Shown piece by piece: positions 11,312 through 27,294 of a stretch of DNA of 64,000 bases (positions within the stretch are counted from its first letter, which is position 1; the number at the start of each line of letters is the position of its first letter). Position numbers and translations under genes: made by a program. The DNA is from Selaginella moellendorffii. Lineage: Eukaryota; Plantae; Lycopodiophyta. The stretch is taken from contig NW_003314369.1 in NCBI RefSeq assembly GCF_000143415.4, positions 248,001-312,000 of the forward strand. Direction: 5' to 3'. Under the pieces are notes generated by a model that saw only the letters and a program-made list of their open reading frames with translations, was not told the origin of the DNA and searched no databases.

Positions 11312-13015
11312 CTAGTATCCCGGACCCGCGACTTCTCCTTCGTTCTCGCCATCGTAGCCGCCACCGCCACCACTGCCCGACCCCGACCCCGACCCGGACC
11401 CGGATCCATATCCACTGCCTCCATTTCCACCATAGCCAGATCCCGAGCCAGTGCCAGAGCCAGAGCCGGAGCCATAGCCACTCCCTCCAGTTCCACCAGT
11501 TCCATAGCCAGAGCCGGAACCAGCGCCGGAACCGTAGCCACTTCCGCCACCATTTCCCCCGCTCCCATAGCCACTTCCAGTTCCAGAACCAGAGCCATGG
11601 CCTTCGCCACCTTTGGCACCTTCGCCATAACCAGAGCCAGAGCCAGAGCCCGAGCCATATCCACTTCCAGCACCGTGTCCCGGAGCATATCCATCGCCAC
11701 CTTTGGCACCCTCGCCGTAGCCAGAACCGGAGCCAGAGCCCGAGCCATATCCACTTCCAGCACCGTGCCCCGGAGCATAACCATCGCCATGTCCCGGAGC
11801 ATAGCCATCGCCATAACCAGAGCCGGCACCAGAGCCCGAGCCATATCCACTTCCGCTTCCAGCACCGTGTCCTGCACCCGCACCAGAGCCATAGCCGCTT
11901 CCACTTCCAGCACCGTGTCCACTGCCACTTCCACTCCCATAGCCGCTTCCACTTCCAGCACCGTGTCCCGCGCCACCTCCATAGCCAGAGCCGGAGCCAG
12001 AGCCACTTCCAGAGCCACTTCCATAGCCGGAGCCGGCGCCAGTGCCTTTACCATATCCCGAGCCACTTCCACTTCCAGAGCCAGCTCCATATCCGGTCCC
12101 AGCACCGTAGCCTTTACCGGCGCCAGAGCCGCTTCCACCACCGTAGCCAACTCCAGCGCCGAGTCCAAGCCCGGCACCCGAGCCACCACCTACGAGTCCG
12201 TCAACCACGTTGCCAACTCCGTTGCCTACATGGCGAGCAATGTCACCGAGCAGACCGTCGGGTTGAACGCCAGCAGTGGAAGCCGGGTGGCCGGGCTCGT
12301 GGTTCTCCGTGTGGATCCCACCAGTGTGACCGGGAATGTGGTTGTCCGTGTGAGCATCACCGTGACCAGGCTTGTGGTGCTTCGACGAGAAGTCCTGATG
12401 ACCAGGCTTGTGGTTGCTTGTCGAAACATCCGCAGCTACAGTGGCAAAAGATTGAGCGACGGCATCACCGTGACCGGGCTTGTGGTTCTCCGTATGAACT
12501 CCACCAGTGTGACCGGGCTTGTGGTTCTCCGTAGAAACTCCACCGGTGTGACCAGGCTTGTGGTTCTCAGTCGAAACTCCACCGGTGTGACCAGGTTTGT
12601 GGTTGTCAGTTGAAACTCCACCGGTGTGACCAGGCTTGTGGTTGTCAACGTGAACTTCTGGCTTGTGATTGTTCGTTGACGCGTCCGAGTGACCGGGCTT
12701 GTGATTTTTCGTTGACATCTCTCCCGCTGTCCAATACGGCGGTATAGCTGCGTCAGGCTTGTGGTTCTCCGTGTGAAACCCACCGGTGTGCCCAGGCTTG
12801 TGATTGTTCGTCGACACGTCCGAGTGGCCAGGCTTGTGATCATCTGGCTGGACCACGCCATGCCCGGGCTTGTGGTTCTTCACGGAGCCTCCAAACTCAG
12901 GGTGATCGTAAGAGTCTGCATTGCCAACCAACGTCTTGTCGCGAGCTTCAGCAACCTGCAGGACGAGGATCGACAAGAGACAAGTTAGCACAACAATCGG
13001 CTTGAGTAGCTCCAT
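11312..13015 (-). CDS. Secreted 567-aa protein: signal peptide, ~15 NHKPGH-type repeats, then a Gly/Ser/Tyr-rich (GSGSGY) domain
   Basis: Single-exon ORF with hydrophobic N-terminus ending VAEA|R, obvious internal repeats and an upstream TATA box. Confidence 0.85.
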   Translation of the reverse strand: MELLKPIVVLTCLLSILVLQVAEARDKTLVGNADSYDHPEFGGSVKNHKPGHGVVQPDDHKPGHSDVSTNNHKPGHTGGFHTENHKPDAAIPPYWTAGEMSTKNHKPGHSDASTNNHKPEVHVDNHKPGHTGGVSTDNHKPGHTGGVSTENHKPGHTGGVSTENHKPGHTGGVHTENHKPGHGDAVAQSFATVAADVSTSNHKPGHQDFSSKHHKPGHGDAHTDNHIPGHTGGIHTENHEPGHPASTAGVQPDGLLGDIARHVGNGVGNVVDGLVGGGSGAGLGLGAGVGYGGGSGSGAGKGYGAGTGYGAGSGSGSGSGYGKGTGAGSGYGSGSGSGSGSGSGYGGGAGHGAGSGSGYGSGSGSGHGAGSGSGYGSGAGAGHGAGSGSGYGSGSGAGSGYGDGYAPGHGDGYAPGHGAGSGYGSGSGSGSGYGEGAKGGDGYAPGHGAGSGYGSGSGSGSGYGEGAKGGEGHGSGSGTGSGYGSGGNGGGSGYGSGAGSGSGYGTGGTGGSGYGSGSGSGTGSGSGYGGNGGSGYGSGSGSGSGSGSGGGGGYDGENEGEVAGPGY

Positions 13016-14624: not shown

Positions 14625-17082
14625 ATGGCGTTCCAGCATTTCTGGAAGATCATCGTCCTCCCAGCGCTCTTGTGTTTGAGCGTCACTTCATCTGGAAGAG
14701 CCTACGATGATCCCACTACCAACGTGAGTAGTAAATTCTCGACTGATAGAAAGAGCGATCGCTTACCTGTGTTGTGTGTTCGTAGACTTATGTTGTTTAC
14801 ATGGGAGGAAAACAAGCCGGGATCGAGCCAGCATCGGTCACTGCAGGACACCATCAAATCCTTGCGCAAGTCTTTGGAAGGCAAGCTAAAGAACTTACAG
14901 ATCGTCGCGATTTTTTGCTTTCTTTCCTCCTGGCTGATTGACGACTTCCTTTTTCTTCATTTCCAGCATGGAGGTGGCAGCGAGCAAGATCCGGTATAGT
15001 TACAACTATGCTTTCAGTGGATTCTCGGCAACACTGACAGCGGATGAAGCTGAAAAGATAAAAGGTGATCAGCTGAGAATACAAAACAAGAGGAGAAAAT
15101 CTCACCTTTTGATCTTGCAGGAATGCCTGGAGTTGTGAGCGTTTTTCGCAGCAGAAACATCCAGCTCCATACGACCAGATCGTGGGACTTTCTAGGCCTC
15201 TCACTGTCCAAACAAGTCCCATTAAATGCATCCTCAGACGTGATAGTCGGTCTACTAGACACTGGTACGTACCTTGGTTCTTGTCTCGCTGGTTTTCTCT
15301 AACTCTGGCTTCGTGAAGGCATTTGGCCGGAATCCAAGAGCTTCAGTGACGCCGGCATGGGACCTGTACCGTCGAGATGGAAAGGACAATGCGTAAACGG
15401 TGCCACTAACGTCTCGGAACAAGTTATATGCAACAGGTACCTCATTCTCTTATTGCATGGCTCCCGTTCGACTTGAAAGGATGTTCTCGCAGGAAAGTAA
15501 TTGGAGCTCGCTACTACGAGCTCGGCGTAAGCGAGAGGAGATATGAATCCGGCAGGGACGAGATCGGGCACGGATCACACACAGCGTCCACAGCTGCAGG
15601 AAGAGAAGTTCCAGGAGCAAACTCAGACGGGACAGCCAAAGGAACAGCTCGAGGAGGCTTACCGGGAGCTCGGATCGCCGTGTACAAAGTCTGCTGGATC
15701 TTCAAAAAGTGTAGCGACGACGGGATCCTGGCTGCCTTTGACGACGCGATAAAAGATGGAGTCGACATCCTGTCCATCTCGCTCGGTGCCGAGACGCCAG
15801 CGTCGTTCGACCAAGACAGCGTTGCGATTGGAACCTTTCATGCCGCTCAACACGGGATCAGTATTTCAACCTCTGCTGGAAACAGTGGTCCGATGATGGG
15901 ATCCATCGCAAACTTTGCTCCTTGGATGTTAAGCATCGCTGCAAGCACTACGGACAGGGGCGATAGCTCTTTGACATCAGAATCGGTATAGTAGCAAGCT
16001 TTTCACTTTGAAAAAAATTTCAGCATGTTTACTTGGAATTTTCTCAGCCCAACCAAGGACTGCCAACTTCAAGCGCACCAGTCATTCCGTATTTCTCAGC
16101 AAGAGGACCTAGCAGATTCAGTCCAAGCATTCTCAAAGTAAGAAGCTGCAAGCTCTCCAAAGCACAAAGTTAACTCAGACCTTTGTTCTTTGCTTTTTTT
16201 CTTGTTCCATGCTCGAAGCCGGATGTTGCTGCTCCGGGAGTTCACATCCTTGCAGCTTGGCCTGACAACATAGCCACCGAGAATGGAGAACTTAACCAAC
16301 AGTTTGGATTTCTTACCGGAACATCCATGGCCTGTCCTCATGCCACGGGAGTCATCGCTTACGTGAAATCGCTCCACCCGAAATGGAGTCCAGCGGCTAT
16401 CAAGTCGGCCATCATGACAACAGGTAAAGCTTTCTTCTTCCCTGCAAACGAAAGAAAAAGAAAAACCGTGAGAACTTGATCTTAAACTTCGCTTGTTCTT
16501 GCAGCAAACAATCTAGACAATACCAAGAAAGTGATGAAGGTCGACTCTGGAGACACTGGAACTCCATTCGACTATGGAACCGGAGAAGTCCAGCCGGTCC
16601 TAGCAGCTGATCCTGGCCTTGTCTACGATCTGGACGTCGCAGACTACGTGACTCACCTTTGCAGCGATGGATTCACCTCGGCCCAGCTGCGAACAATCTC
16701 TGGAAACCCAAACATTACTTGTCCATCGCCCAAGAAGCATCCCCGGCCTCCTCTCAACTATCCCTCTTTCTCCTTCCCGGCGCTCGAAATCGCGGTCCCC
16801 CAGTCATCCCAGCGGACGCTCACAAACGTCGGCCCCGAGAAAGCATCCACCTACACCGCTACCATCACCAATGCCGAGGCTTCCACAGCCGCGTCTATCA
16901 CCGTGGCGCCTTCCAAGCTCGCCTTCACCAAGATCGGCCAGAAACTCGCCTACACGCTCACCGTGAATGCCTCCGCGGCGCCAAGCTCGCCGATCGAGTG
17001 GGCGTTCGCGTGGATCAGCTGGAGCGATGGGAAGCACCAGGTCAAGAGTCCCATCGCCATGAAGATAAACCCTAAATCCTGA
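14625..17082 (+). CDS. Subtilisin-like serine protease (S8A with I9 propeptide and FnIII-like C-terminus), PA domain absent
   Basis: Signal peptide; [12 protein letters not shown]; [11 protein letters not shown]; D in LDTG; H in [11 protein letters not shown]; oxyanion N in AGNSGP; S in GTSMACPH; LNYPS. Confidence 0.9.
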
Positions 17083-17154: not shown

Positions 17155-17395
17155 TAATTCAAGAAGTGGCGATTGGGAGTAAGCAATGTCATGGAACAGT
17201 GCAAACGATGTTATCTTTTTCTTTTGACTCTGAAGATCCAAAACGATGACATGGCAAATACAGCTGAAGTAGAAGTTTTTTCAGTAGCTCCTGCTATTAC
17301 GAAGAAGTTCGCTGGAACCATCTAAAGAGCCGAAAACCCGGGATCTTGATCTTGGATGGCAGATCTAGTTGACCATCGAGCCAAAACCTTCATGA
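17155..17395 (-). pseudogene. Deletion-collapsed copy of the WWE-ART gene
   Basis: Colinear blocks shared with 19550-20477: gcgattgggagtaag, tccaaaacgatgaca, agtagaagt, ctggaacca..aagagccga, gatcttgatcttggatggc. Confidence 0.75.
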
Positions 17396-17504
17396 GAATA
17401 TCAACAATTCCAGCAAGGTGTGAGCTACCTATATGCTACGCATGGGTTTTACTCGAAAACCTTGAACTTGTATGGTTGTCTTGTAAATCAATAACAATTT
17501 ATTA

Positions 17505-17720
17505 ACAGAAAGTAGCGATTTGGAAACGATGCTATCTTTTCTCTGGCTTTGAATATCCTAAACGCAAGAGAGCGGCAATAATGACTTGGAGTCTTGATCT
17601 TGGATGCAGGTCTTCCACTGTCATCTTTTTTCAAGTCGACCACAGTGAGCGCGAGAAGAAGGCGATTTTGGCCGTGCCCGAGCTCTTGGTGGCGAGGATA
17701 CGTCGTTCCATCGTCGCAGC
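17505..17720 (-). pseudogene. Second deletion-collapsed copy of the WWE-ART gene
   Basis: Shared blocks gtagcgattt/gg, gctttgaatatcc, gcggcaataat, cactgtcatcttttt, gagaagaaggcga, cgtcgttccatcgtc; translated remnants DDGTT and LALTVVDLKK. Confidence 0.8.
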
Positions 17721-19286
17721 CAATAAAGAACTTGTTTTGATCGCTTCTTTCACAGCGAAATCGCCCGGCTGTCCTCGTGATCTCCAAATCCCCACGTTGC
17801 GCCTGGGCCTAGATGAGCGCGCAAAATCAATCCAAATCATGCTCTTGTAGCCCAGGAGCTCCAGGCTCTTGAAAATCGAAATTAACCTGGAGCGGCAGAT
17901 CGCGGAGCTCCCCTTCCTTGATTGCGCGAAGAACTCGAGCGCGCGCCCTAACCCTCTCAAAATTTTGGCGCCAAAATCAAATTTGGTGTCATTGCTTGAA
18001 CGTTTTGGAAACAATGATGCTCACAACGTCCTCTTGTCTTGAGGAGCTGAGACATGGTCAAGGTACTTTGCCTTTGTCATCCAAGCGCTATTCTAAAACT
18101 CTACTCTCTGCCAAGAAGTTTTCCCCAAGCCCCTCCAAGGTTTTAGTCAAGAGCCTCCTCTACCTTCCATCAACCATAATACTAGTTTATAAATAGTGTA
18201 ATTTCTGCCCTAAAGTGGAATGTACTCTTTCACCGCTTGGAGCTGTACAAGCCAGGGTGAAAATCAACAGCCTACATATGAACGAGTGTTTGGGAGAAGC
18301 AAGGAGTTTCATAGAAGAAGTTACTAGAGCGATCAACACCAGATGTACACCTGTACAACATGAAGACAGTTCAAAACTGGTCCAAGCTACACGCAGCAAC
18401 GTCGATGGACGTCGGCTAAAGACTTTTTTCTTGATTTCATCAGAGAACATTATGGAGAAATTGCAATTCCGCTCCAATAGTTCTGAATTGGAAGGCCGAA
18501 GACATCTTAAAAAAGATGATATCATGGAAGAACGAGAAGAAACGAAAGAGTGTGTAACAGCAGTAGTAGCAAGGTTTGTTTTTCCACTTATCTATTGTCT
18601 TATTTTATATTAGCAAACAAAGAAAGAGAACCTCATGGAGCCCAGACCAGGCTTATCATCGACAAGTTAGGTATACTTAGTTATATTGCTTCACAGAGAG
18701 CGGCGGATTGAGAACTTGACAGGCCTTGAGAAATTGCAGAAACAGAAAAAGAGTCGCTTTATATGTACATGTTTCCTTTTCAGGAAGGCGGCACACTGGA
18801 CAGACATGCTATTACAAGTAGTGGAGAAGAGTCAAGAACAGAGCGGAGTAGAAACGAAGTACAGTGTTCAAAGACATTGTAAAGATTTCGAATCATCGTG
18901 TGACGCACGCTCGCAAGACACCAACTCCCTCAAAACAAAAGAAAGGAAGGTGATGAAGGTAATGAAGTGTTTGAGCTTCAAGGTGAGCTTGCCTTTGTGC
19001 GGAAAGTAGGTTATACCTCCCACGAGGACATCCTTGATGTGATTAGCAATCTTTGAAATGTTACAAAAAGATTTCTCCTTTCCATAACTTTTTGTGATAG
19101 ATCAAATGCTTGGTTTCCATGAATGGCTGCCTTCAGAATGTTGAGGAAGCCATTGAATCTCACAAAAGCTATAGATTGGTTTATACATTGGTAATGTAGA
19201 ATAGTCTGGAATTATATATTGGAATCAAAGTTGGTTTATACATAGAAAACTAATAAAAAGAACCAATGTAGCCCATCTAAAAAACA

Positions 19287-19303
19287 TGTGTGTGTGTGTG
19301 TGT
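19287..19303 (+). repeat. (TG)n microsatellite
   Basis: tgtgtgtg run. Confidence 0.8.
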
Positions 19304-19549
19304 TTTTGAATTTCTTGTGAAAAGGCATGTCATTTGGTCCAAAAGAGGAAGTAAACACCATCAAGAAGACAGTGATTTTGTTCATACTCACTAAATTACT
19401 TGACCTTAACCCCAGAAGTATATATAAACTTTCATAATCTTCCTCCGTTGATTAGTTTAATTGCATAAGACTAGCATAAGTGATTAGTCTAATTGATTGG
19501 CATATAAGATTAGAAAAAAATGTACTAAAATATCTTCCTGCTCAAAAAG

Positions 19550-20477
19550 CTAAATCCAAAAGGTAGCGATTGGGAGTAAGTAATGTGGTGTCCCGCATGG
19601 AACTACGCAAATGTTGCCATCTTTTGTTTTGCTTTGAATATCCAAAACGATGACAACGCGTGAGAGCTGATGGCCGCGGCGGCAATAATCTCTAGCAAAC
19701 ACGGCCGACCTCGCAAAGTAGAAGTCTGCGTGGCAGCTCTTGCTGAATCCATTGCGAAGAATGGAATCGATGTTAACCTCGGGAGTCCCGTGGAAGCCGA
19801 TGCCAATCGATCCCATCTCCGTTCCTATACTTCCAATTAGATCGCATTGGAAAGAAGATGGAAACTTTACCTCTTTCCGGGTTGTAGAAAGCCTCACAAA
19901 ACTTGCTATAGATCGGATGCTTCTCCCTCTCCCCGGGCGTGACCACGTAAGGATTCAGCTTCATGTCACTCCCTCCATGCACTTTCTCCAGAAACTCCGC
20001 GAGTTTGTTGTCCACGAGCCAGTCCAGCCACTGTTTTCCAGTGAGCTTTGATCCCTCGGAGCACTCGCCGGGCACTGGAACCAGCTGAAGAGCCGAGTGA
20101 TGCCACACCGGCACCGAGTTCAAGAGGATGCGCTGCGAGCTTGCATCTATGGAATCTGGCGAGCTTGCATCCATGGAGTCTGGCGAGGTTGCAGCCATGG
20201 AGTCTGGCGTGGAGCTAGAGTCTGGCTTGGATCCAGACTCTGGCGTGGAGCTAGACTCTGACTTGGAGATCTTGATCTTGGATGGCTTGCGGCCCCAGGT
20301 CTTGGACACTGTCATCTTTTTCAAGTCGACCACCGTGAGCGCCAGGCATCCCGAGAAGAAGGCGAATTTGGTCGTGCCGGAGCTCTTGGCGGCGAGAATC
20401 CTCTCGGACAAGAACTTGGATTCGCACTCCTTCCACGTCGTTCCATCGTCCCTGCTGATCCACACTTGGTCCGTCAT
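19550..20477 (-). CDS. 293-aa WWE-like + PARP-like (ARTD) ADP-ribosyltransferase domain protein, 2 exons (intron 19825-19870)
   Basis: A 46-nt GT-AG intron joins ...NPERG|TEMGSIGIGFHGT in frame. N-terminus has W-x8-W, SERILAA and VDLKKM. Catalytic-type motifs are FHGT, ILRNGF, FYFA, ARDYC and NICVV...YLLP. Confidence 0.75.
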
Positions 20478-20719
20478 ACTACCGCTTTTTAAAATAACCT
20501 AGCTCAAAAATGCCCGTGCCCGCTTTGATCGGCCCCAAAATTCATAGCCGAAAATCAAAATGTTGCGCCAAACTTGCTTATTTCAATCTGTTTTTGGCTG
20601 AATTTTATTAAATGAGAATGCGTACGAAAGTGTAGGATCAGATTCGATCTTGCATGTCCGAGCGCCGGAGGTACCGGCAAAATCATCCGATGCGGTCTTC
20701 TTCTTCTCCTACGCGCTAC

Positions 20720-21160
20720 TGCCACCCCATCTGCTTCCTGCGTGTTCTCCTCCGGGCTTGCCTCTACGATCTCGCGCGAAGAGCTCCTGCCCGAGATGGT
20801 AGTCTTTTCCCTGGCACCTTGCACGGCTTTGGCGACGTCTCGATACCGAGGTGTGTGCAACGCCAAGATCACCGCTCTGTGCAAGGAGGCCTGGCTGGAC
20901 GCTGTTCTTGTGGAGTATGCTGAGGAAGTGGCCGCCACCATCTTCCAGCCATACACGGCCAGGCCCCTGCAAGCTGAAGCGGCTGGAGCAGGCCTTGATC
21001 TCAGGCGATCGATCTCTTGGGGTGCAGTAACAACTCCCAAATGGGAAAGATGGACGAGGCGATGAACCAGCTGGAGAGGATGCCCGAGACTGGAAGCTCT
21101 CCAGACGTGGTTACTTACACCACTCTCATGAATGGCTTCAAGTTGGCAAGGCTGGACGAT
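20720..21160 (+). pseudogene. P-class PPR gene remnant
   Basis: CNAKITALCKEAWLD and GKMDEAMNQLERMPETGSSPDVVTYTTLMNGF-KLARLDDA-stop, broken by frameshifts. Confidence 0.75.
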
Positions 21161-21269
21161 GCGTAGCTTTATGGAGAATGACGCCGTGCATACTCTCGGC
21201 GAGATAAGGAGGAGGAGCTGTTTGTCTTGCTTTACCTCCACTGAGAAGATGAGGTGTCTCTTGAAGCTG

Positions 21270-25833: not shown

Positions 25834-27294
25834 CTAGGTTTCGTCTTCTCCTGCGCGGCAGGAACTTGATTCCTTCGACCAAGCAGAAGAAGCACTAGGA
25901 CTGCTCTCCGCATCCGAATCCAAATCAAAATCCGTGCTCGACCCGGAGCAAGAAGAGCCTGTTCGCTCATCAGACGATACCGAAGACACGGTGGCGGCCT
26001 TCCCGTCGTCGTCGTCCCCGGAGCTCTCTCCTTCGCCTGAGGAGCTCGGTGAGCGCTCTCCTTCGTCTGACGAAGAACAAGAGCTTGGCCTCCTGCTCCA
26101 AGGCGGGGTCATGCACGCAACCTCCTCCTCACCGCCAACAATTCCCAGCTTCTGCAACTTACCACACAGCCTCTCCACACAAAGCTGCACAGCCTGCACG
26201 TCCCAAGTGCCCATCTCCATCTCCTCCTCGAACAGCACCTGAGGATCACAAGACTCGTGCGACCAGTGCCTCCTCGCATGCCCAGCCAACTCCGGTGCCC
26301 CCCCTCGAATCAGCTGCTGCTTGAAGAAGCCAAACAGCTCCTCGGCCTCCTCCTCATCCTCCTCCTTGTAGTAGGAAAACGGGAGAAAGAAACAAGCGGC
26401 CAAGCTCTGCACGGTCCCCGTCCTGGCCCCGTCCCAGTCCAGAATGCACTGGACGTGCCCCGATGCCGGATCCACCAGGACTTGGCGCGGTCCAAAGTCG
26501 GGGTGGTGAAGAAAAAACCGGCTCCCCCCGCTGGATTCTTGAAACTCGTCCAGCCACCTGAGCAAAATCGCCGCGTTTGCCCGTATCGATTCGCCATACC
26601 TGCGGCTGTTTCCATACAGCAGCACCAGCCCTCCAATGTGGTTCCTCGCGTACTCCTTCCACGACGAGTAAGGCCCGGGGCTGAGAGCCCCCACGTCCAT
26701 CCCGCGCTCCATCGCCTCGGACACCGGACTCTGCGGTACCGGTCCCAGGTGGACAGCCCCGGCACCGTCGGATGCGCCTACCGCCATGCCCCCCATCGAA
26801 TCCAACGGCCGCTGGTAGAGCCGGATGGTGACGTCTGCCAGGCCAGCGAGCACGGTCTTCTTCCACTCCACGGTGGCACCCTTCCTCCACAGCTCCCACG
26901 CCGGCACGCCCTCGGCGACGGGCATGACGGTCAGGTGGGATTTGCCGCGTGGCGTGTAGGGCAGCGGTGGCGATGCCACGCGGACGGGCCCTGCCACGAC
27001 GGTCGGGATGCCCAGCCCCGCCAGGAAGAGCGTCGCGGCGTAGCCCGAATCCGCCACCGGGCTTCTAATGCGGCTCTCACCTCCGAGTGGGAGTCGAATG
27101 GCAACGCGCTCTTCTCGTTTACCTTGATGACTTTGGTGGAGCTGGGCGTCGAGCACAAGATTCCAACTCCCCATACCTAGAATCCCGTTAAATCGAACGG
27201 CGCAACCCAGGATTCTACCCACGATCCTCTCCAGTTGCGCTGGAGAGCACAGAAAGCTTGAAAAGACGGCACTCCGCAGCTCCTTGTCCGCCAT
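25834..27294 (-). CDS. Intronless aminoglycoside-phosphotransferase (APH/choline-kinase-like) protein with Ser/acidic tail
   Basis: GSWN, AIRLP, GIP, AEG...W, GPYSS, FLHHPDFGPRQVLVD, ILDWDGA; telo-box immediately upstream. Confidence 0.8.
   Translation of the reverse strand: MADKELRSAVFSSFLCSPAQLERIVGRILGCAVRFNGILGMGSWNLVLDAQLHQSHQGKREERVAIRLPLGGESRIRSPVADSGYAATLFLAGLGIPTVVAGPVRVASPPLPYTPRGKSHLTVMPVAEGVPAWELWRKGATVEWKKTVLAGLADVTIRLYQRPLDSMGGMAVGASDGAGAVHLGPVPQSPVSEAMERGMDVGALSPGPYSSWKEYARNHIGGLVLLYGNSRRYGESIRANAAILLRWLDEFQESSGGSRFFLHHPDFGPRQVLVDPASGHVQCILDWDGARTGTVQSLAACFFLPFSYYKEEDEEEAEELFGFFKQQLIRGGAPELAGHARRHWSHESCDPQVLFEEEMEMGTWDVQAVQLCVERLCGKLQKLGIVGGEEEVACMTPPWSRRPSSCSSSDEGERSPSSSGEGESSGDDDDGKAATVSSVSSDERTGSSCSGSSTDFDLDSDAESSPSASSAWSKESSSCRAGEDET

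What the first reader, a model, noticed from the sequence alone, without database searches (positions are those of the whole stretch)
19550..20477. Compact WWE + PARP-like mono-ADP-ribosyltransferase candidate unlike plant PARP1-3 or SRO/RCD1
Seen: two ORFs in different frames are joined by a 46-nt GT-AG intron into a 293-aa protein. It has a WWE-like N-terminus, a Ser-rich repeat linker and FHGT / FYFA / DYC / NICVV motifs with a very short donor loop. Known: ARTD enzymes use an H-Y-E triad, and H-Y-I/L variants are mono-ARTs (animal PARP7/11/12 also carry WWE). Plant WWE-PARP proteins (RCD1/SRO1) have a degenerate triad plus an RST domain. Inference: this protein keeps the NAD-binding H and Y, has I at the third position and lacks RST, so it may be an undescribed lineage-specific mono-ART, possibly in defence.
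Basis: partly seen in the sequence, partly recalled or inferred. Interest (0 to 1): 0.85.

Follow-up and report, generated by a model that had tools for sequence, protein, structure and literature searches.

The report
Spikemoss compact WWE-like plus PARP-like gene
This is a real, spliced, selectively constrained Selaginella moellendorffii gene for a 293-residue protein with a WWE-like head and an unusually small PARP-type ADP-ribosyltransferase domain; it differs from the PARPs and RCD1/SRO proteins described in plants, and whether it is an active enzyme is untested.

Summary
On the minus strand, two exons (20477-19871 and 19824-19550) are joined across a 46-nt GT-AG intron. The 293-aa product is letter-identical to the public Selaginella moellendorffii model EFJ08533.1 / UniProt D8T4A0, auto-named "PARP catalytic domain-containing protein". 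A 934-nt public contig carries exactly the spliced form.

The C-terminal ~150 residues fold as a PARP catalytic domain (Z 12.5-13.1 to RCD1, PARP14, PARP12 and PARP13). They belong to an unnamed compact PARP subfamily known only from protist-like and giant-virus contigs. A family model built without the spikemoss protein scores it at 61.9 bits.

H214, Y238, Y249 and I274 (an H-Y-I triad) are present and there is no RST domain. The protein lacks six loop residues that its relatives conserve, and has Ala where PARPs have the nicotinamide-binding Ser. The WWE-like head rests on predicted structure only; Pfam does not detect it.

The two haplotypes differ about ten times less in the coding sequence than in the flanks, so the gene is constrained.

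My leading reading is a WWE-guided mono-ADP-ribosyltransferase; a non-catalytic pseudo-PARP is nearly as likely. A defence role has no support here. This scan has already noted the same family on other DNA of this genome.

The parts
19514..20493 (-). Transcript extent seen in a public assembled contig (934 nt once the intron is removed)
   Evidence: table 8: pieces 19514-19823 and 19870-20493 belong to one record of run X1
19871..20477 (-). Coding exon 1 (ATG at 20477; 607 nt; ends in phase 1)
19825..19870 (-). 46-nt GT-AG intron
   Evidence: skipped in the contig of run X1 (table 5); identical in both haplotypes
19550..19824 (-). Coding exon 2, stop codon included (19550-19552); encodes the HGT / YFA / Y / NICVV core
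   Evidence: 0 differences in 275 nt between haplotypes
20268..20477 (-). WWE-like N-terminal domain, residues 1-70 (predicted order strand-strand-helix-strand-strand-strand; contains an Asp-box-like SRDDGTTW at 8-15)
   Evidence: ESM Atlas model: TM 0.69-0.78 to ten clusters, nine listed with PF02825 WWE. Secondary structure. No Pfam WWE hit at E<=10
20127..20267 (-). Ser/Pro/Asp-rich repeat linker, residues 71-117; predicted disordered
   Evidence: TRF arrays at 20135-20209 (24 nt x 3.1) and 20203-20268 (18 nt x 3.7). pLDDT 27-38. A 12-nt in-frame indel between haplotypes lies at its end
19553..20045 (-). Compact PARP-type ART domain, residues 145-293 (interrupted by the intron)
   Evidence: AF2 pLDDT 72, pTM 0.69. 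Foldseek finds PARP12/10/14/15/13 at E 2e-5 to 1e-4. VIA Z 13.1 to RCD1 and 12.5-13.0 to PARP14/12/13. Leave-one-out family HMM 61.9 bits
19790..19792 (-). Codon of His214 (HGT motif; triad position 1)
   Evidence: Invariant column; aligned to the HGT/HGS of PARP12 and tankyrase
19718..19720 (-). Codon of Tyr238 (YFA motif; triad position 2)
   Evidence: Invariant column; aligned to the YFA of PARP12/13
19694..19696 (-). Codon of Ala246, at the position where most relatives and PARP12 have Ser (three residues before Tyr249)
19685..19687 (-). Codon of Tyr249 (second, nicotinamide-stacking Tyr position)
   Evidence: Invariant column
19610..19612 (-). Codon of Ile274 (inferred triad position 3; relatives have Val or Ile)
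   Evidence: Family alignment. It is the first residue of strand 274-277 in the model. The equivalence to the catalytic Glu of PARP1 is inferred, not read from a residue-level structural alignment

Best explanation
This is an expressed, selectively constrained two-exon gene of Selaginella moellendorffii. It encodes a 293-aa protein built of three parts: a WWE-like head (residues 1-70), a disordered Ser-rich repeat linker (71-117), and a minimal PARP-type ADP-ribosyltransferase domain (145-293).

The ART domain belongs to an unnamed compact PARP subfamily otherwise seen only in protist-like and giant-virus contigs. This subfamily keeps the HGT ... YF ... Y ... [V/I] core but lacks the long segment that full-size PARPs carry between the fifth strand and the 'catalytic Glu' strand.

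My working mechanism is inferred. The H214/G215/Y238/Y249 pocket binds NAD+. With Ile274 in place of Glu, the protein would transfer single ADP-ribose units to itself or to a partner, as H-Y-I PARPs do. The WWE-like head would dock it onto ADP-ribose-bearing or other partner proteins.

Shown: gene structure, splicing, constraint, the fold, family kinship and the residues present. Inferred: NAD+ binding, mono-ART activity and the role of the WWE-like head.
For: Gene model and expression:
- The spliced product is identical to the public protein P0011.
- The spliced form is present in a public contig that ends near the gene's ends.

Constraint:
- Against the syntenic second haplotype (L012), the CDS has 5 differences in 870 nt and exon 2 has 0 in 275. 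The flanks have 30 in 534, plus 9 indels (Fisher p 5e-9).
- Four of the five coding changes are silent.

Fold:
- AF2 pLDDT is 72.
- PARP catalytic domains fill the Foldseek and VIA lists, with Z 11.6-13.1 over 124-135 residues.

Family kinship:
- Exhaustive phmmer finds relatives only for residues ~160-285.
- Seven of the nine relatives pass Pfam's PARP cutoff.
- A family HMM built without Selaginella scores it at 61.9 bits, against 4.6 bits at most for 1000 shuffles.
- The family profile hits PARP13 at 2.4e-12, PARP12 at 2.8e-8, tankyrase at 1.4e-7 and PARP10 at 4.5e-7.

Residues:
- H, G, both Tyr and the YC pair stay invariant although the Selaginella branch is by far the longest in the family tree (3.04 versus a median of 0.12). 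That pattern fits selection on the NAD+ pocket.

WWE-like head:
- The ESM Atlas model of residues 1-72 matches ten clusters at TM 0.69-0.78. Nine of them, including PARP11 and TIPARP clusters, are listed with the WWE family.
- The whole model aligns over residues 5-293 to a TIPARP cluster.
Against: - The protein itself scores below Pfam's PARP cutoff (15.5-17.9 bits versus 26.7).
- It lacks six residues of the loop before YF.
- It departs from four near-invariant family positions there: R, Q, G and E become H, gap, gap and F.
- Ala246 replaces the Ser that most relatives and PARP12 keep.
- The very long branch could equally reflect loss of the ancestral activity.
- No WWE profile hit exists. 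In my own low-confidence AF2 model (pLDDT 45-55 there), the head matched nothing WWE-like in the wide structural search.
- Three RNA-seq runs gave no reads on the gene, although this was not a valid test.
- No activity data of any kind exist.
Confidence: 0.45

Rival explanations
1. Pseudo-PARP. The domain keeps the PARP fold but no longer transfers ADP-ribose. The protein would act as a scaffold or reader, for instance by binding NAD+, ADP-ribose or partner proteins, as RCD1/SRO, PARP13/ZAP and TASOR do.
For: - Six-residue loop deletion, and loss of four near-invariant family residues next to Tyr238.
- Ser-to-Ala at position 246.
- The longest branch of the family.
- Structural Z values tie with known inactive domains: RCD1 5ngo 13.1, wheat SRO1 7plq 12.5, PARP13 12.5, and the TASOR pseudo-PARP 9.8.
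- The gene is still under constraint, so a non-catalytic function is plausible.
Against: From general knowledge of these families, known pseudo-PARPs have usually lost the His and/or Tyr of the triad. Here H214, G215, Y238 and Y249 all survive extreme divergence. From general knowledge of the fold, diphtheria-toxin-type and Tpt1-type enzymes work without that Ser.
Confidence: 0.38
2. A fast-evolving conflict or defence gene. On this reading it is a member of a birth-and-death family of compact PARP-like genes in the spikemoss, perhaps acquired horizontally from a protist or giant virus, acting against pathogens or selfish elements.
For: - A decayed tandem copy lies 2 kb away, in both haplotypes.
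- The only sequence relatives are on protist-like and giant-virus contigs.
- No annotated homologue was found in any other plant among 1.84 billion representatives.
- First-stage notes of this scan, untested here, report further copies and relics in this genome, some beside NTPase-nuclease genes.
Against: - The neighbours in this window are ordinary genes.
- The two haplotypes show purifying rather than diversifying change.
- The tree does not resolve where the Selaginella sequence attaches, so no donor can be named.
- The gene has a host-type short intron.
- This explanation concerns the biological role and is compatible with either biochemical reading above.
Confidence: 0.12
3. An annotation artefact or dying gene with no function.
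For: It is an orphan. There is a relic copy nearby. Its Pfam scores are below threshold. Three RNA-seq runs gave no reads.
Against: - The reading frame is intact in both haplotypes, and the only indel is in frame.
- The CDS diverges about ten times less than the flanks.
- A spliced transcript-like contig exists.
- Kinship to a PARP subfamily is highly significant.
Confidence: 0.05

Closest known systems
Animal WWE-type mono-ARTs (PARP11, PARP7/TIPARP, PARP12, PARP13/ZAP; 'clade 3E' of Citarelli et al. 2010, PMC2964712)
   Same: A WWE(-like) domain lies directly upstream of a PARP catalytic fold. Ile or Val stands at the third triad position. These proteins give the best sequence-profile hits of the compact family (PARP13 2.4e-12, PARP12 2.8e-8). 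Atlas structural matches of the head and of the whole model fall on PARP11 and TIPARP clusters. PARP11 has the same simple two-domain layout.
   Different: The catalytic domain here is about 120-150 residues instead of about 190. The long segment before the last two strands is missing and the donor loop is 6 residues shorter than in its own relatives. Ser is replaced by Ala246. There is no zinc finger. The paper states that clade 3 has no plant representative. Membership in that clade was not tested by a tree here.
Plant RCD1/SRO proteins (WWE-PARP-RST; clade 2)
   Same: They are plant proteins with a WWE domain followed by a PARP-like fold. The top structural Z scores are tied (RCD1 5ngo 13.1, wheat SRO1 7plq 12.5).
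   Different: There is no RST domain: the protein ends with the last strand of the ART fold, and Pfam finds nothing more. It keeps His and Tyr, which RCD1 lacks according to PMC2964712 and PMC2848248. Sequence identity to 5ngo and 7plq in the structural alignment is only 5-8%. Neither appears among the 60 best sequence-profile hits.
Unnamed compact PARP subfamily from protist-like and giant-virus contigs (P0002-P0010, P0024-P0030)
   Same: Its members have the same domain length and strand order, and the same motifs (FHGTPE.NI, YF, YC, and [V/I]VV followed by LP). The leave-one-out HMM gives 61.9 bits end to end over residues 172-290.
   Different: Identity is only 18-31%. In Pfam scans at E<=0.01, none of the nine members checked showed a WWE domain or any other family besides PARP, apart from UBA domains in P0010 and the PDZ protein P0006. 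P0002 starts with what looks to me like a RanBP2-type zinc finger, read by eye and not tested. The relatives keep the R..GQ..G.GEYF loop, and most keep the Ser that Selaginella has lost.
Tpt1/KptA RNA 2'-phosphotransferase
   Same: It has a comparably small ART lobe with an HGT motif. There are weak hits: Pfam E 0.13, PDB 7kw8 E 0.045, and the family profile at 1e-4.
   Different: These hits are much weaker than those to PARPs, and the structural Z is 5.9 against 11-13. The N-terminal lobe of Tpt1 is absent, and the YF / Y signature is PARP-like.

Membership tests
PARP catalytic domain (Pfam PF00644) | Score at or above Pfam's gathering cutoff (26.7 bits) | tested here: not met
   15.5-17.9 bits, E 0.002-0.013, covering only profile positions 53-112 of 199
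PARP catalytic domain (Pfam PF00644) | Homology traceable through intermediate sequences that are themselves members | tested here: met
   Seven relatives pass the cutoff. An HMM of 19 domain sequences without Selaginella scores it at 61.9 bits. The family profile hits solved PARP13/12/TNKS/10/15/14 at E 2e-12 to 3e-6
PARP catalytic domain (Pfam PF00644) | ART fold of PARP type | tested here: met
   AF2 domain model at pLDDT 72. VIA Z 11.6-13.1, rmsd 2.2-3.4 over 123-135 residues, to many PARP domains. Foldseek E down to 2e-5
PARP catalytic domain (Pfam PF00644) | H-Y-E triad or its H-Y-I/L/V mono-ART variant | tested here: met
   H214 and Y238 align to the HGT/S and YFA of PARP12/13/TNKS. I274 is placed by family alignment and strand position, which is an inference
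PARP catalytic domain (Pfam PF00644) | Nicotinamide-binding Ser three residues before the second Tyr | tested here: not met
   Ala246. Most relatives and PARP12 have Ser
PARP catalytic domain (Pfam PF00644) | NAD+-dependent ADP-ribosyl transfer | not testable with these tools
   Needs a biochemical assay
WWE domain (Pfam PF02825) | Profile match | tested here: not met
   No WWE hit at E<=10 for residues 1-75, exon 1 or the whole protein. No WWE chain in a PDB sequence search at E<=10
WWE domain (Pfam PF02825) | WWE fold (strand-strand-helix-strand-strand-strand half-barrel) | tested here: inconclusive
   For: the ESM Atlas model of residues 1-72 gives TM 0.69-0.78 over 68-70 residues, and nine of the ten rows list WWE. 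The secondary-structure order fits. Language-model neighbours are WWE clusters, but only at 0.81. Against: my AF2 model has pLDDT 45-55 there and found no WWE chain (best Z 5.2)
RCD1/SRO (plant clade 2) | C-terminal RST domain | tested here: not met
   The protein ends at residue 293 with the last ART strand; no RST hit
RCD1/SRO (plant clade 2) | Sequence kinship of the PARP-like domain with SROs | tested here: inconclusive
   5ngo and 7plq are absent from the 60 best profile hits, and identity is 5-8% in structural alignments. No tree with SRO sequences could be built, because none was available by reference
PARP1/2/3 (clade 1) | WGR and PARP regulatory (PRD) domains; Glu at triad position 3 | tested here: not met
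   No such Pfam hits; Ile274. The profile E-value to PARP1 is only 2e-4
Tpt1/KptA | Two-lobed protein with an N-terminal RNA-binding lobe; profile match above the cutoff of 26 bits | tested here: not met
   12.7 bits; Z 5.9, restricted to residues 207-291

The most novel reading that the evidence does not exclude
The spikemoss protein is an active, WWE-guided mono-ADP-ribosyltransferase of a previously unnamed minimal PARP clade shared with protists and giant viruses. On this reading the Selaginella lineage gained or uniquely retained the clade and expanded it as a fast-turnover family. It would be the first plant PARP-type mono-ART outside PARP1-3 and the SROs, and possibly part of a conflict system.
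Probability: 0.15. Interest if true: 0.75.

Novelty: new variant of a known kind. Interest (0 to 1): 0.5.

Why it matters
The plant PARP surveys I read describe only PARP1-3-type enzymes, the largely inactive RCD1/SRO proteins and, in bryophytes, clade 6 PARPs. Citarelli et al. 2010 (PMC2964712) state that the WWE-bearing clade 3 has no plant representative. A 2025 plant-wide survey (PMC12785305) required both the PRD and the catalytic domain, so it could not have seen this gene.

A constrained, expressed WWE-like + H-Y-I PARP-fold protein in a lycophyte would widen the known plant ADP-ribosylation toolkit. The compact domain (about 120 core residues, lacking the long segment full-size PARPs carry before the last two strands) would also be a useful minimal model of a PARP-type fold. 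Its presence on giant-virus contigs hints at a role in host-virus conflict.

If it proves inactive, it is one more lineage-specific pseudo-PARP, and of modest interest.

Tried and rejected
- **41-nt intron.** An alternative intron ending at the first AG (19830) gives an immediate in-frame stop, so it was rejected by reading the sequence.
- **Asp-box / BNR or sortilin reading of the N-terminus.** Only a single SRDDGTTW motif matches, at E 0.01-0.2 and below the cutoffs. I treat it as a motif-level resemblance inside a WWE-like hairpin.
- **Tpt1/KptA reading.** Rejected; see the membership test.
- **Word-indexed searches.** Exon 1 found only the allelic protein. The full-length family alignment added nothing. 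P0004 added seven unnamed relatives.
- **Raw RNA-seq runs X9-X11.** They gave zero reads on the stretch. The tool marks this as no test, so it says nothing about expression.
- **Full-length AF2 model.** It came out at mean pLDDT 49, so I used it only for secondary structure and for the C-terminal domain.
- **Family tree.** It could not place the Selaginella sequence because of its long branch. I name no sister group and no donor.
- **Tree with SRO, PARP1-3 and animal PARPs.** Not built, because no such sequences were available by reference and I did not type them in.
- **Complex prediction.** Not used, because no specific partner is claimed.
- **Literature.** Searches for the locus tags and UniProt accessions found nothing. 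A search for giant-virus PARPs also found nothing.

Full report
**Observation**

The feature lies on the minus strand. ORF 19773..20477(-), 234 aa and starting at an ATG, and ORF 19550..19897(-), 115 aa, are in different frames. Reading the minus strand, exon 1 runs from 20477 to 19871 (607 nt, phase 1). A 46-nt intron, GTAAAG...TATAG, occupies 19870-19825. Exon 2 runs from 19824 to the stop at 19552-19550.

An earlier AG would give a 41-nt intron, but that produces an immediate stop. An in-frame TAG lies 24 nt upstream of the ATG, so the reading frame is closed at its 5' end.

The spliced CDS is 882 nt. Its 293-aa product is letter-identical to P0011 = EFJ08533.1 SELMODRAFT_428872 = UniProt D8T4A0, which one source names "PARP catalytic domain-containing protein" of Selaginella moellendorffii.

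**Expression and splicing**

One 934-nt contig of public run X1 lies on 19514-19823 and continues at 19870-20493. It skips 46 nt with CT..AC ends on the plus strand, which is GT..AG on the gene's strand. The run's kind is only guessed to be RNA.

Two features are what a transcript would give and what genomic DNA would not. The contig lacks exactly the intron, and it ends 16 nt before the ATG and 36 nt after the stop.

Three raw RNA-seq runs of 2026 gave no reads, which the tool itself marks as no test.

**Constraint**

The 289-aa protein P0001 (SELMODRAFT_426614) is encoded on scaffold GL377649.1. Its neighbours are the same as in the window: NIF phosphatase, signal peptidase S26, subtilase and ribosomal protein L9. 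It is therefore the allelic haplotype.

| Region | Differences | Indels |
|---|---|---|
| CDS (870 aligned nt) | 5 | one in-frame 12-nt indel at the end of the repeat linker |
| Intron (46 nt) | 0 | none |
| Exon 2 (275 nt) | 0 | none |
| Flanks (534 aligned nt) | 30 | 9 |

The contrast between CDS and flanks gives Fisher p 5e-9. Four of the five coding changes are silent. The gene is under purifying selection and is not decaying.

**C-terminal domain**

The protein alone is a sub-threshold Pfam PARP hit, at 15.5-17.9 bits against a cutoff of 26.7. It also gives weak Tpt1 hits.

An exhaustive phmmer search of 1.84 billion representatives found its own cluster and nine distant proteins at E 2e-8 to 1e-3. 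Eight of these match residues ~160-285. The ninth, P0006, is a PDZ protein matched only over residues 187-220. Seven of the nine pass Pfam's PARP cutoff.

With further relatives I built a 20-sequence domain alignment (A3). Four results follow from it:
- An HMM of the other 19 sequences scores the Selaginella protein at 61.9 bits over residues 172-290. The best of 1000 shuffles scores 4.6 bits.
- The family profile hits solved PARP13/ZAP (2.4e-12), PARP12 (2.8e-8), tankyrase-1 (1.4e-7), PARP10 (4.5e-7), PARP15 and PARP14. Tpt1 reaches only 1e-4 and PARP1 only 2e-4.
- An AF2 model of residues 145-293 (pLDDT 72, pTM 0.69) retrieves only PARP catalytic domains at the top of the Foldseek list (E from 2e-5).
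- VIA-align gives Z 13.1 to the RCD1 PARP domain, 13.0 to PARP14, 12.8 to PARP12, 12.5 to PARP13, 12.5 to wheat SRO1 and 12.2 to tankyrase-2, each over 124-134 residues.

These Z values are tied, so the fold is PARP-type but structure alone does not assign a clade. A language-model neighbour search agrees, placing PARP clusters at 0.95.

**Residues**

The columns F213, H214, G215, I224, Y238, F239, Y249 and C250 are invariant across the family.

The relatives read [V/I]VV at the start of the penultimate strand, where Selaginella has I274-C-V-V preceded by Asn273. This matches the N-E-Y-I-V pattern of PARP1 as I recall it, so Ile274 is the inferred third triad position.

- The relatives conserve R..GQ..G.GEYF before the triad Tyr. 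Selaginella lacks six of those residues and reads H....ADFYF. This is the "very short donor loop": H-to-Y spacing is 24 instead of 30.
- The Ser three residues before the second Tyr is Ala246 here. Most relatives and PARP12 have Ser at that position.

In the family tree the Selaginella branch is 3.04 substitutions per site, against a median of 0.12, and its position is unresolved.

The whole family also lacks the long segment that full-size PARPs carry between the fifth strand and the strand bearing the third triad residue. Pfam aligns only positions ~45-113 of its 199-position model.

**N-terminus**

No WWE profile hit exists at E<=10. The only sequence-level resemblance is an Asp-box-like SRDDGTTW.

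The predicted secondary structure is strand-strand-helix-strand-strand-strand, which fits a WWE domain.

The ESM Atlas's own model of this protein, restricted to residues 1-72, matches ten clusters at TM 0.69-0.78 over 68-70 residues. Nine of the ten are listed with the WWE family, among them PARP11, TIPARP and WWE-RING clusters. My full-length model aligns from residue 5 to 293 on a TIPARP cluster.

My AF2 model is poor in this region (pLDDT 45-55) and found no WWE chain. I therefore call the head WWE-like by predicted fold only.

**Linker**

Residues 71-117 contain 18 Ser in 49 residues and are modelled as disordered. They are encoded by two DNA tandem arrays.

**What it is not**

- It has no RST, WGR or PRD domain, so it is neither an SRO/RCD1 nor a PARP1-3 type protein.
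- RCD1 and wheat SRO1 do not appear among the 60 best sequence-profile hits and share 5-8% identity in the structural alignments.
- I could not build a tree with SRO sequences, so "does not nest within SROs" rests on architecture and profile ranking.

**Relatives and context**

The relatives are unnamed proteins on short contigs from ENA, Logan and JGI:
- P0003 lies on ~70-kb contigs with two U-box genes and a UvrD helicase. The same contigs are listed in IMG/VR, and a fourth matching contig (L010) is catalogued there as a giant-virus MAG.
- P0030 lies on a eukaryote-like scaffold.
- P0010 carries two compact PARP domains plus UBA domains.

None of the members scanned shows a WWE domain. No annotated plant protein other than the two Selaginella alleles was found.

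In the window the neighbours are ordinary: a subtilase, a PPR fragment, a signal peptidase and a NIF phosphatase. A decayed tandem copy of the gene lies at about 17156-17740(-). It is 75-77% identical in two DNA blocks, carries stops and frameshifts, and has lost most of its middle. It is present in the other haplotype too.

First-stage notes of this scan report further intact copies and relics elsewhere in this genome. One follow-up report describes a "spikemoss-only compact PARP-like gene family" whose fold it could not confirm. I did not test those notes.

**Literature**

Citarelli et al. 2010 (PMC2964712) place plant PARPs in clades 1, 2 and, for bryophytes, 6, and state that the WWE-bearing clade 3 has no plant representative. 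Jaspers et al. 2010 (PMC2848248) list Selaginella SROs only in the RST-bearing group Ic. A 2025 plant survey (PMC12785305) required both the PRD and the catalytic domain. No paper in the library mentions the locus tags or accessions.

**Verdict**

The thing is a real, expressed, constrained gene for a WWE-like + minimal PARP-fold protein with H-Y-I, of a compact PARP subfamily that has no name. Whether it transfers ADP-ribose is open. Retention of the whole H/G/Y/Y set through extreme divergence argues for a working NAD+ pocket. The loop deletion and the Ser-to-Ala change argue against.

I put mono-ART activity at about 0.45 and a non-catalytic pseudo-PARP at about 0.38. A defence role is speculation.

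Noticed in passing
window 17156-17740 (-): Decayed tandem copy of the same gene. DNA is 77% identical over 142 nt (head domain) and 75% over 105 nt (3' end). It has in-frame stops and frameshifts and has lost most of the middle. It is also present in the other haplotype (L012 ~12264-12382).
   Followed up: partly
window ~15428-17082 (+): Subtilase gene fragments (Peptidase_S8, then the fn3_6 C-terminal domain), convergent with the relic and the PARP-like gene.
   Followed up: partly
window 21017-21166 (+): Short ORF with a PPR repeat (PPR_2, E 7.5e-9) just upstream of the gene's 5' end. It looks like a fragment of a pentatricopeptide gene; the rest was not modelled.
   Followed up: no
window 19289-19306: A (GT)n microsatellite in the AT-rich 3' flank of the gene. 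This flank carries most of the indels between the two haplotypes.
   Followed up: no
L004/L005 3001-4095; L007-L010: The compact PARP relative P0003 sits on ~70-kb contigs beside two U-box genes and a UvrD-type helicase. These contigs are listed in IMG/VR, and a fourth matching contig (L010) is catalogued there as a giant-virus MAG.
   Followed up: partly
P0010 (1034 aa, JGI metagenome): One protein carries two copies of the compact PARP domain (residues 37-205 and 582-732) together with UBA domains, which links this subfamily to ubiquitin.
   Followed up: no
window 19928 and 19954 (run X1 contig): The transcript-like contig carries the other haplotype's letters at these two sites. It carries the window's letters at 19992, 19998 and 20397 and lacks the 12-nt deletion. 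It is either a third or recombinant allele, or an assembly mix of both.
   Followed up: partly
window 25834-27294 (-): A 486-aa ORF with only a weak phosphotransferase/kinase-like Pfam hit (APH, E 0.0018, below cutoff). The syntenic gene in the other haplotype (571 aa) has no Pfam family on record.
   Followed up: no
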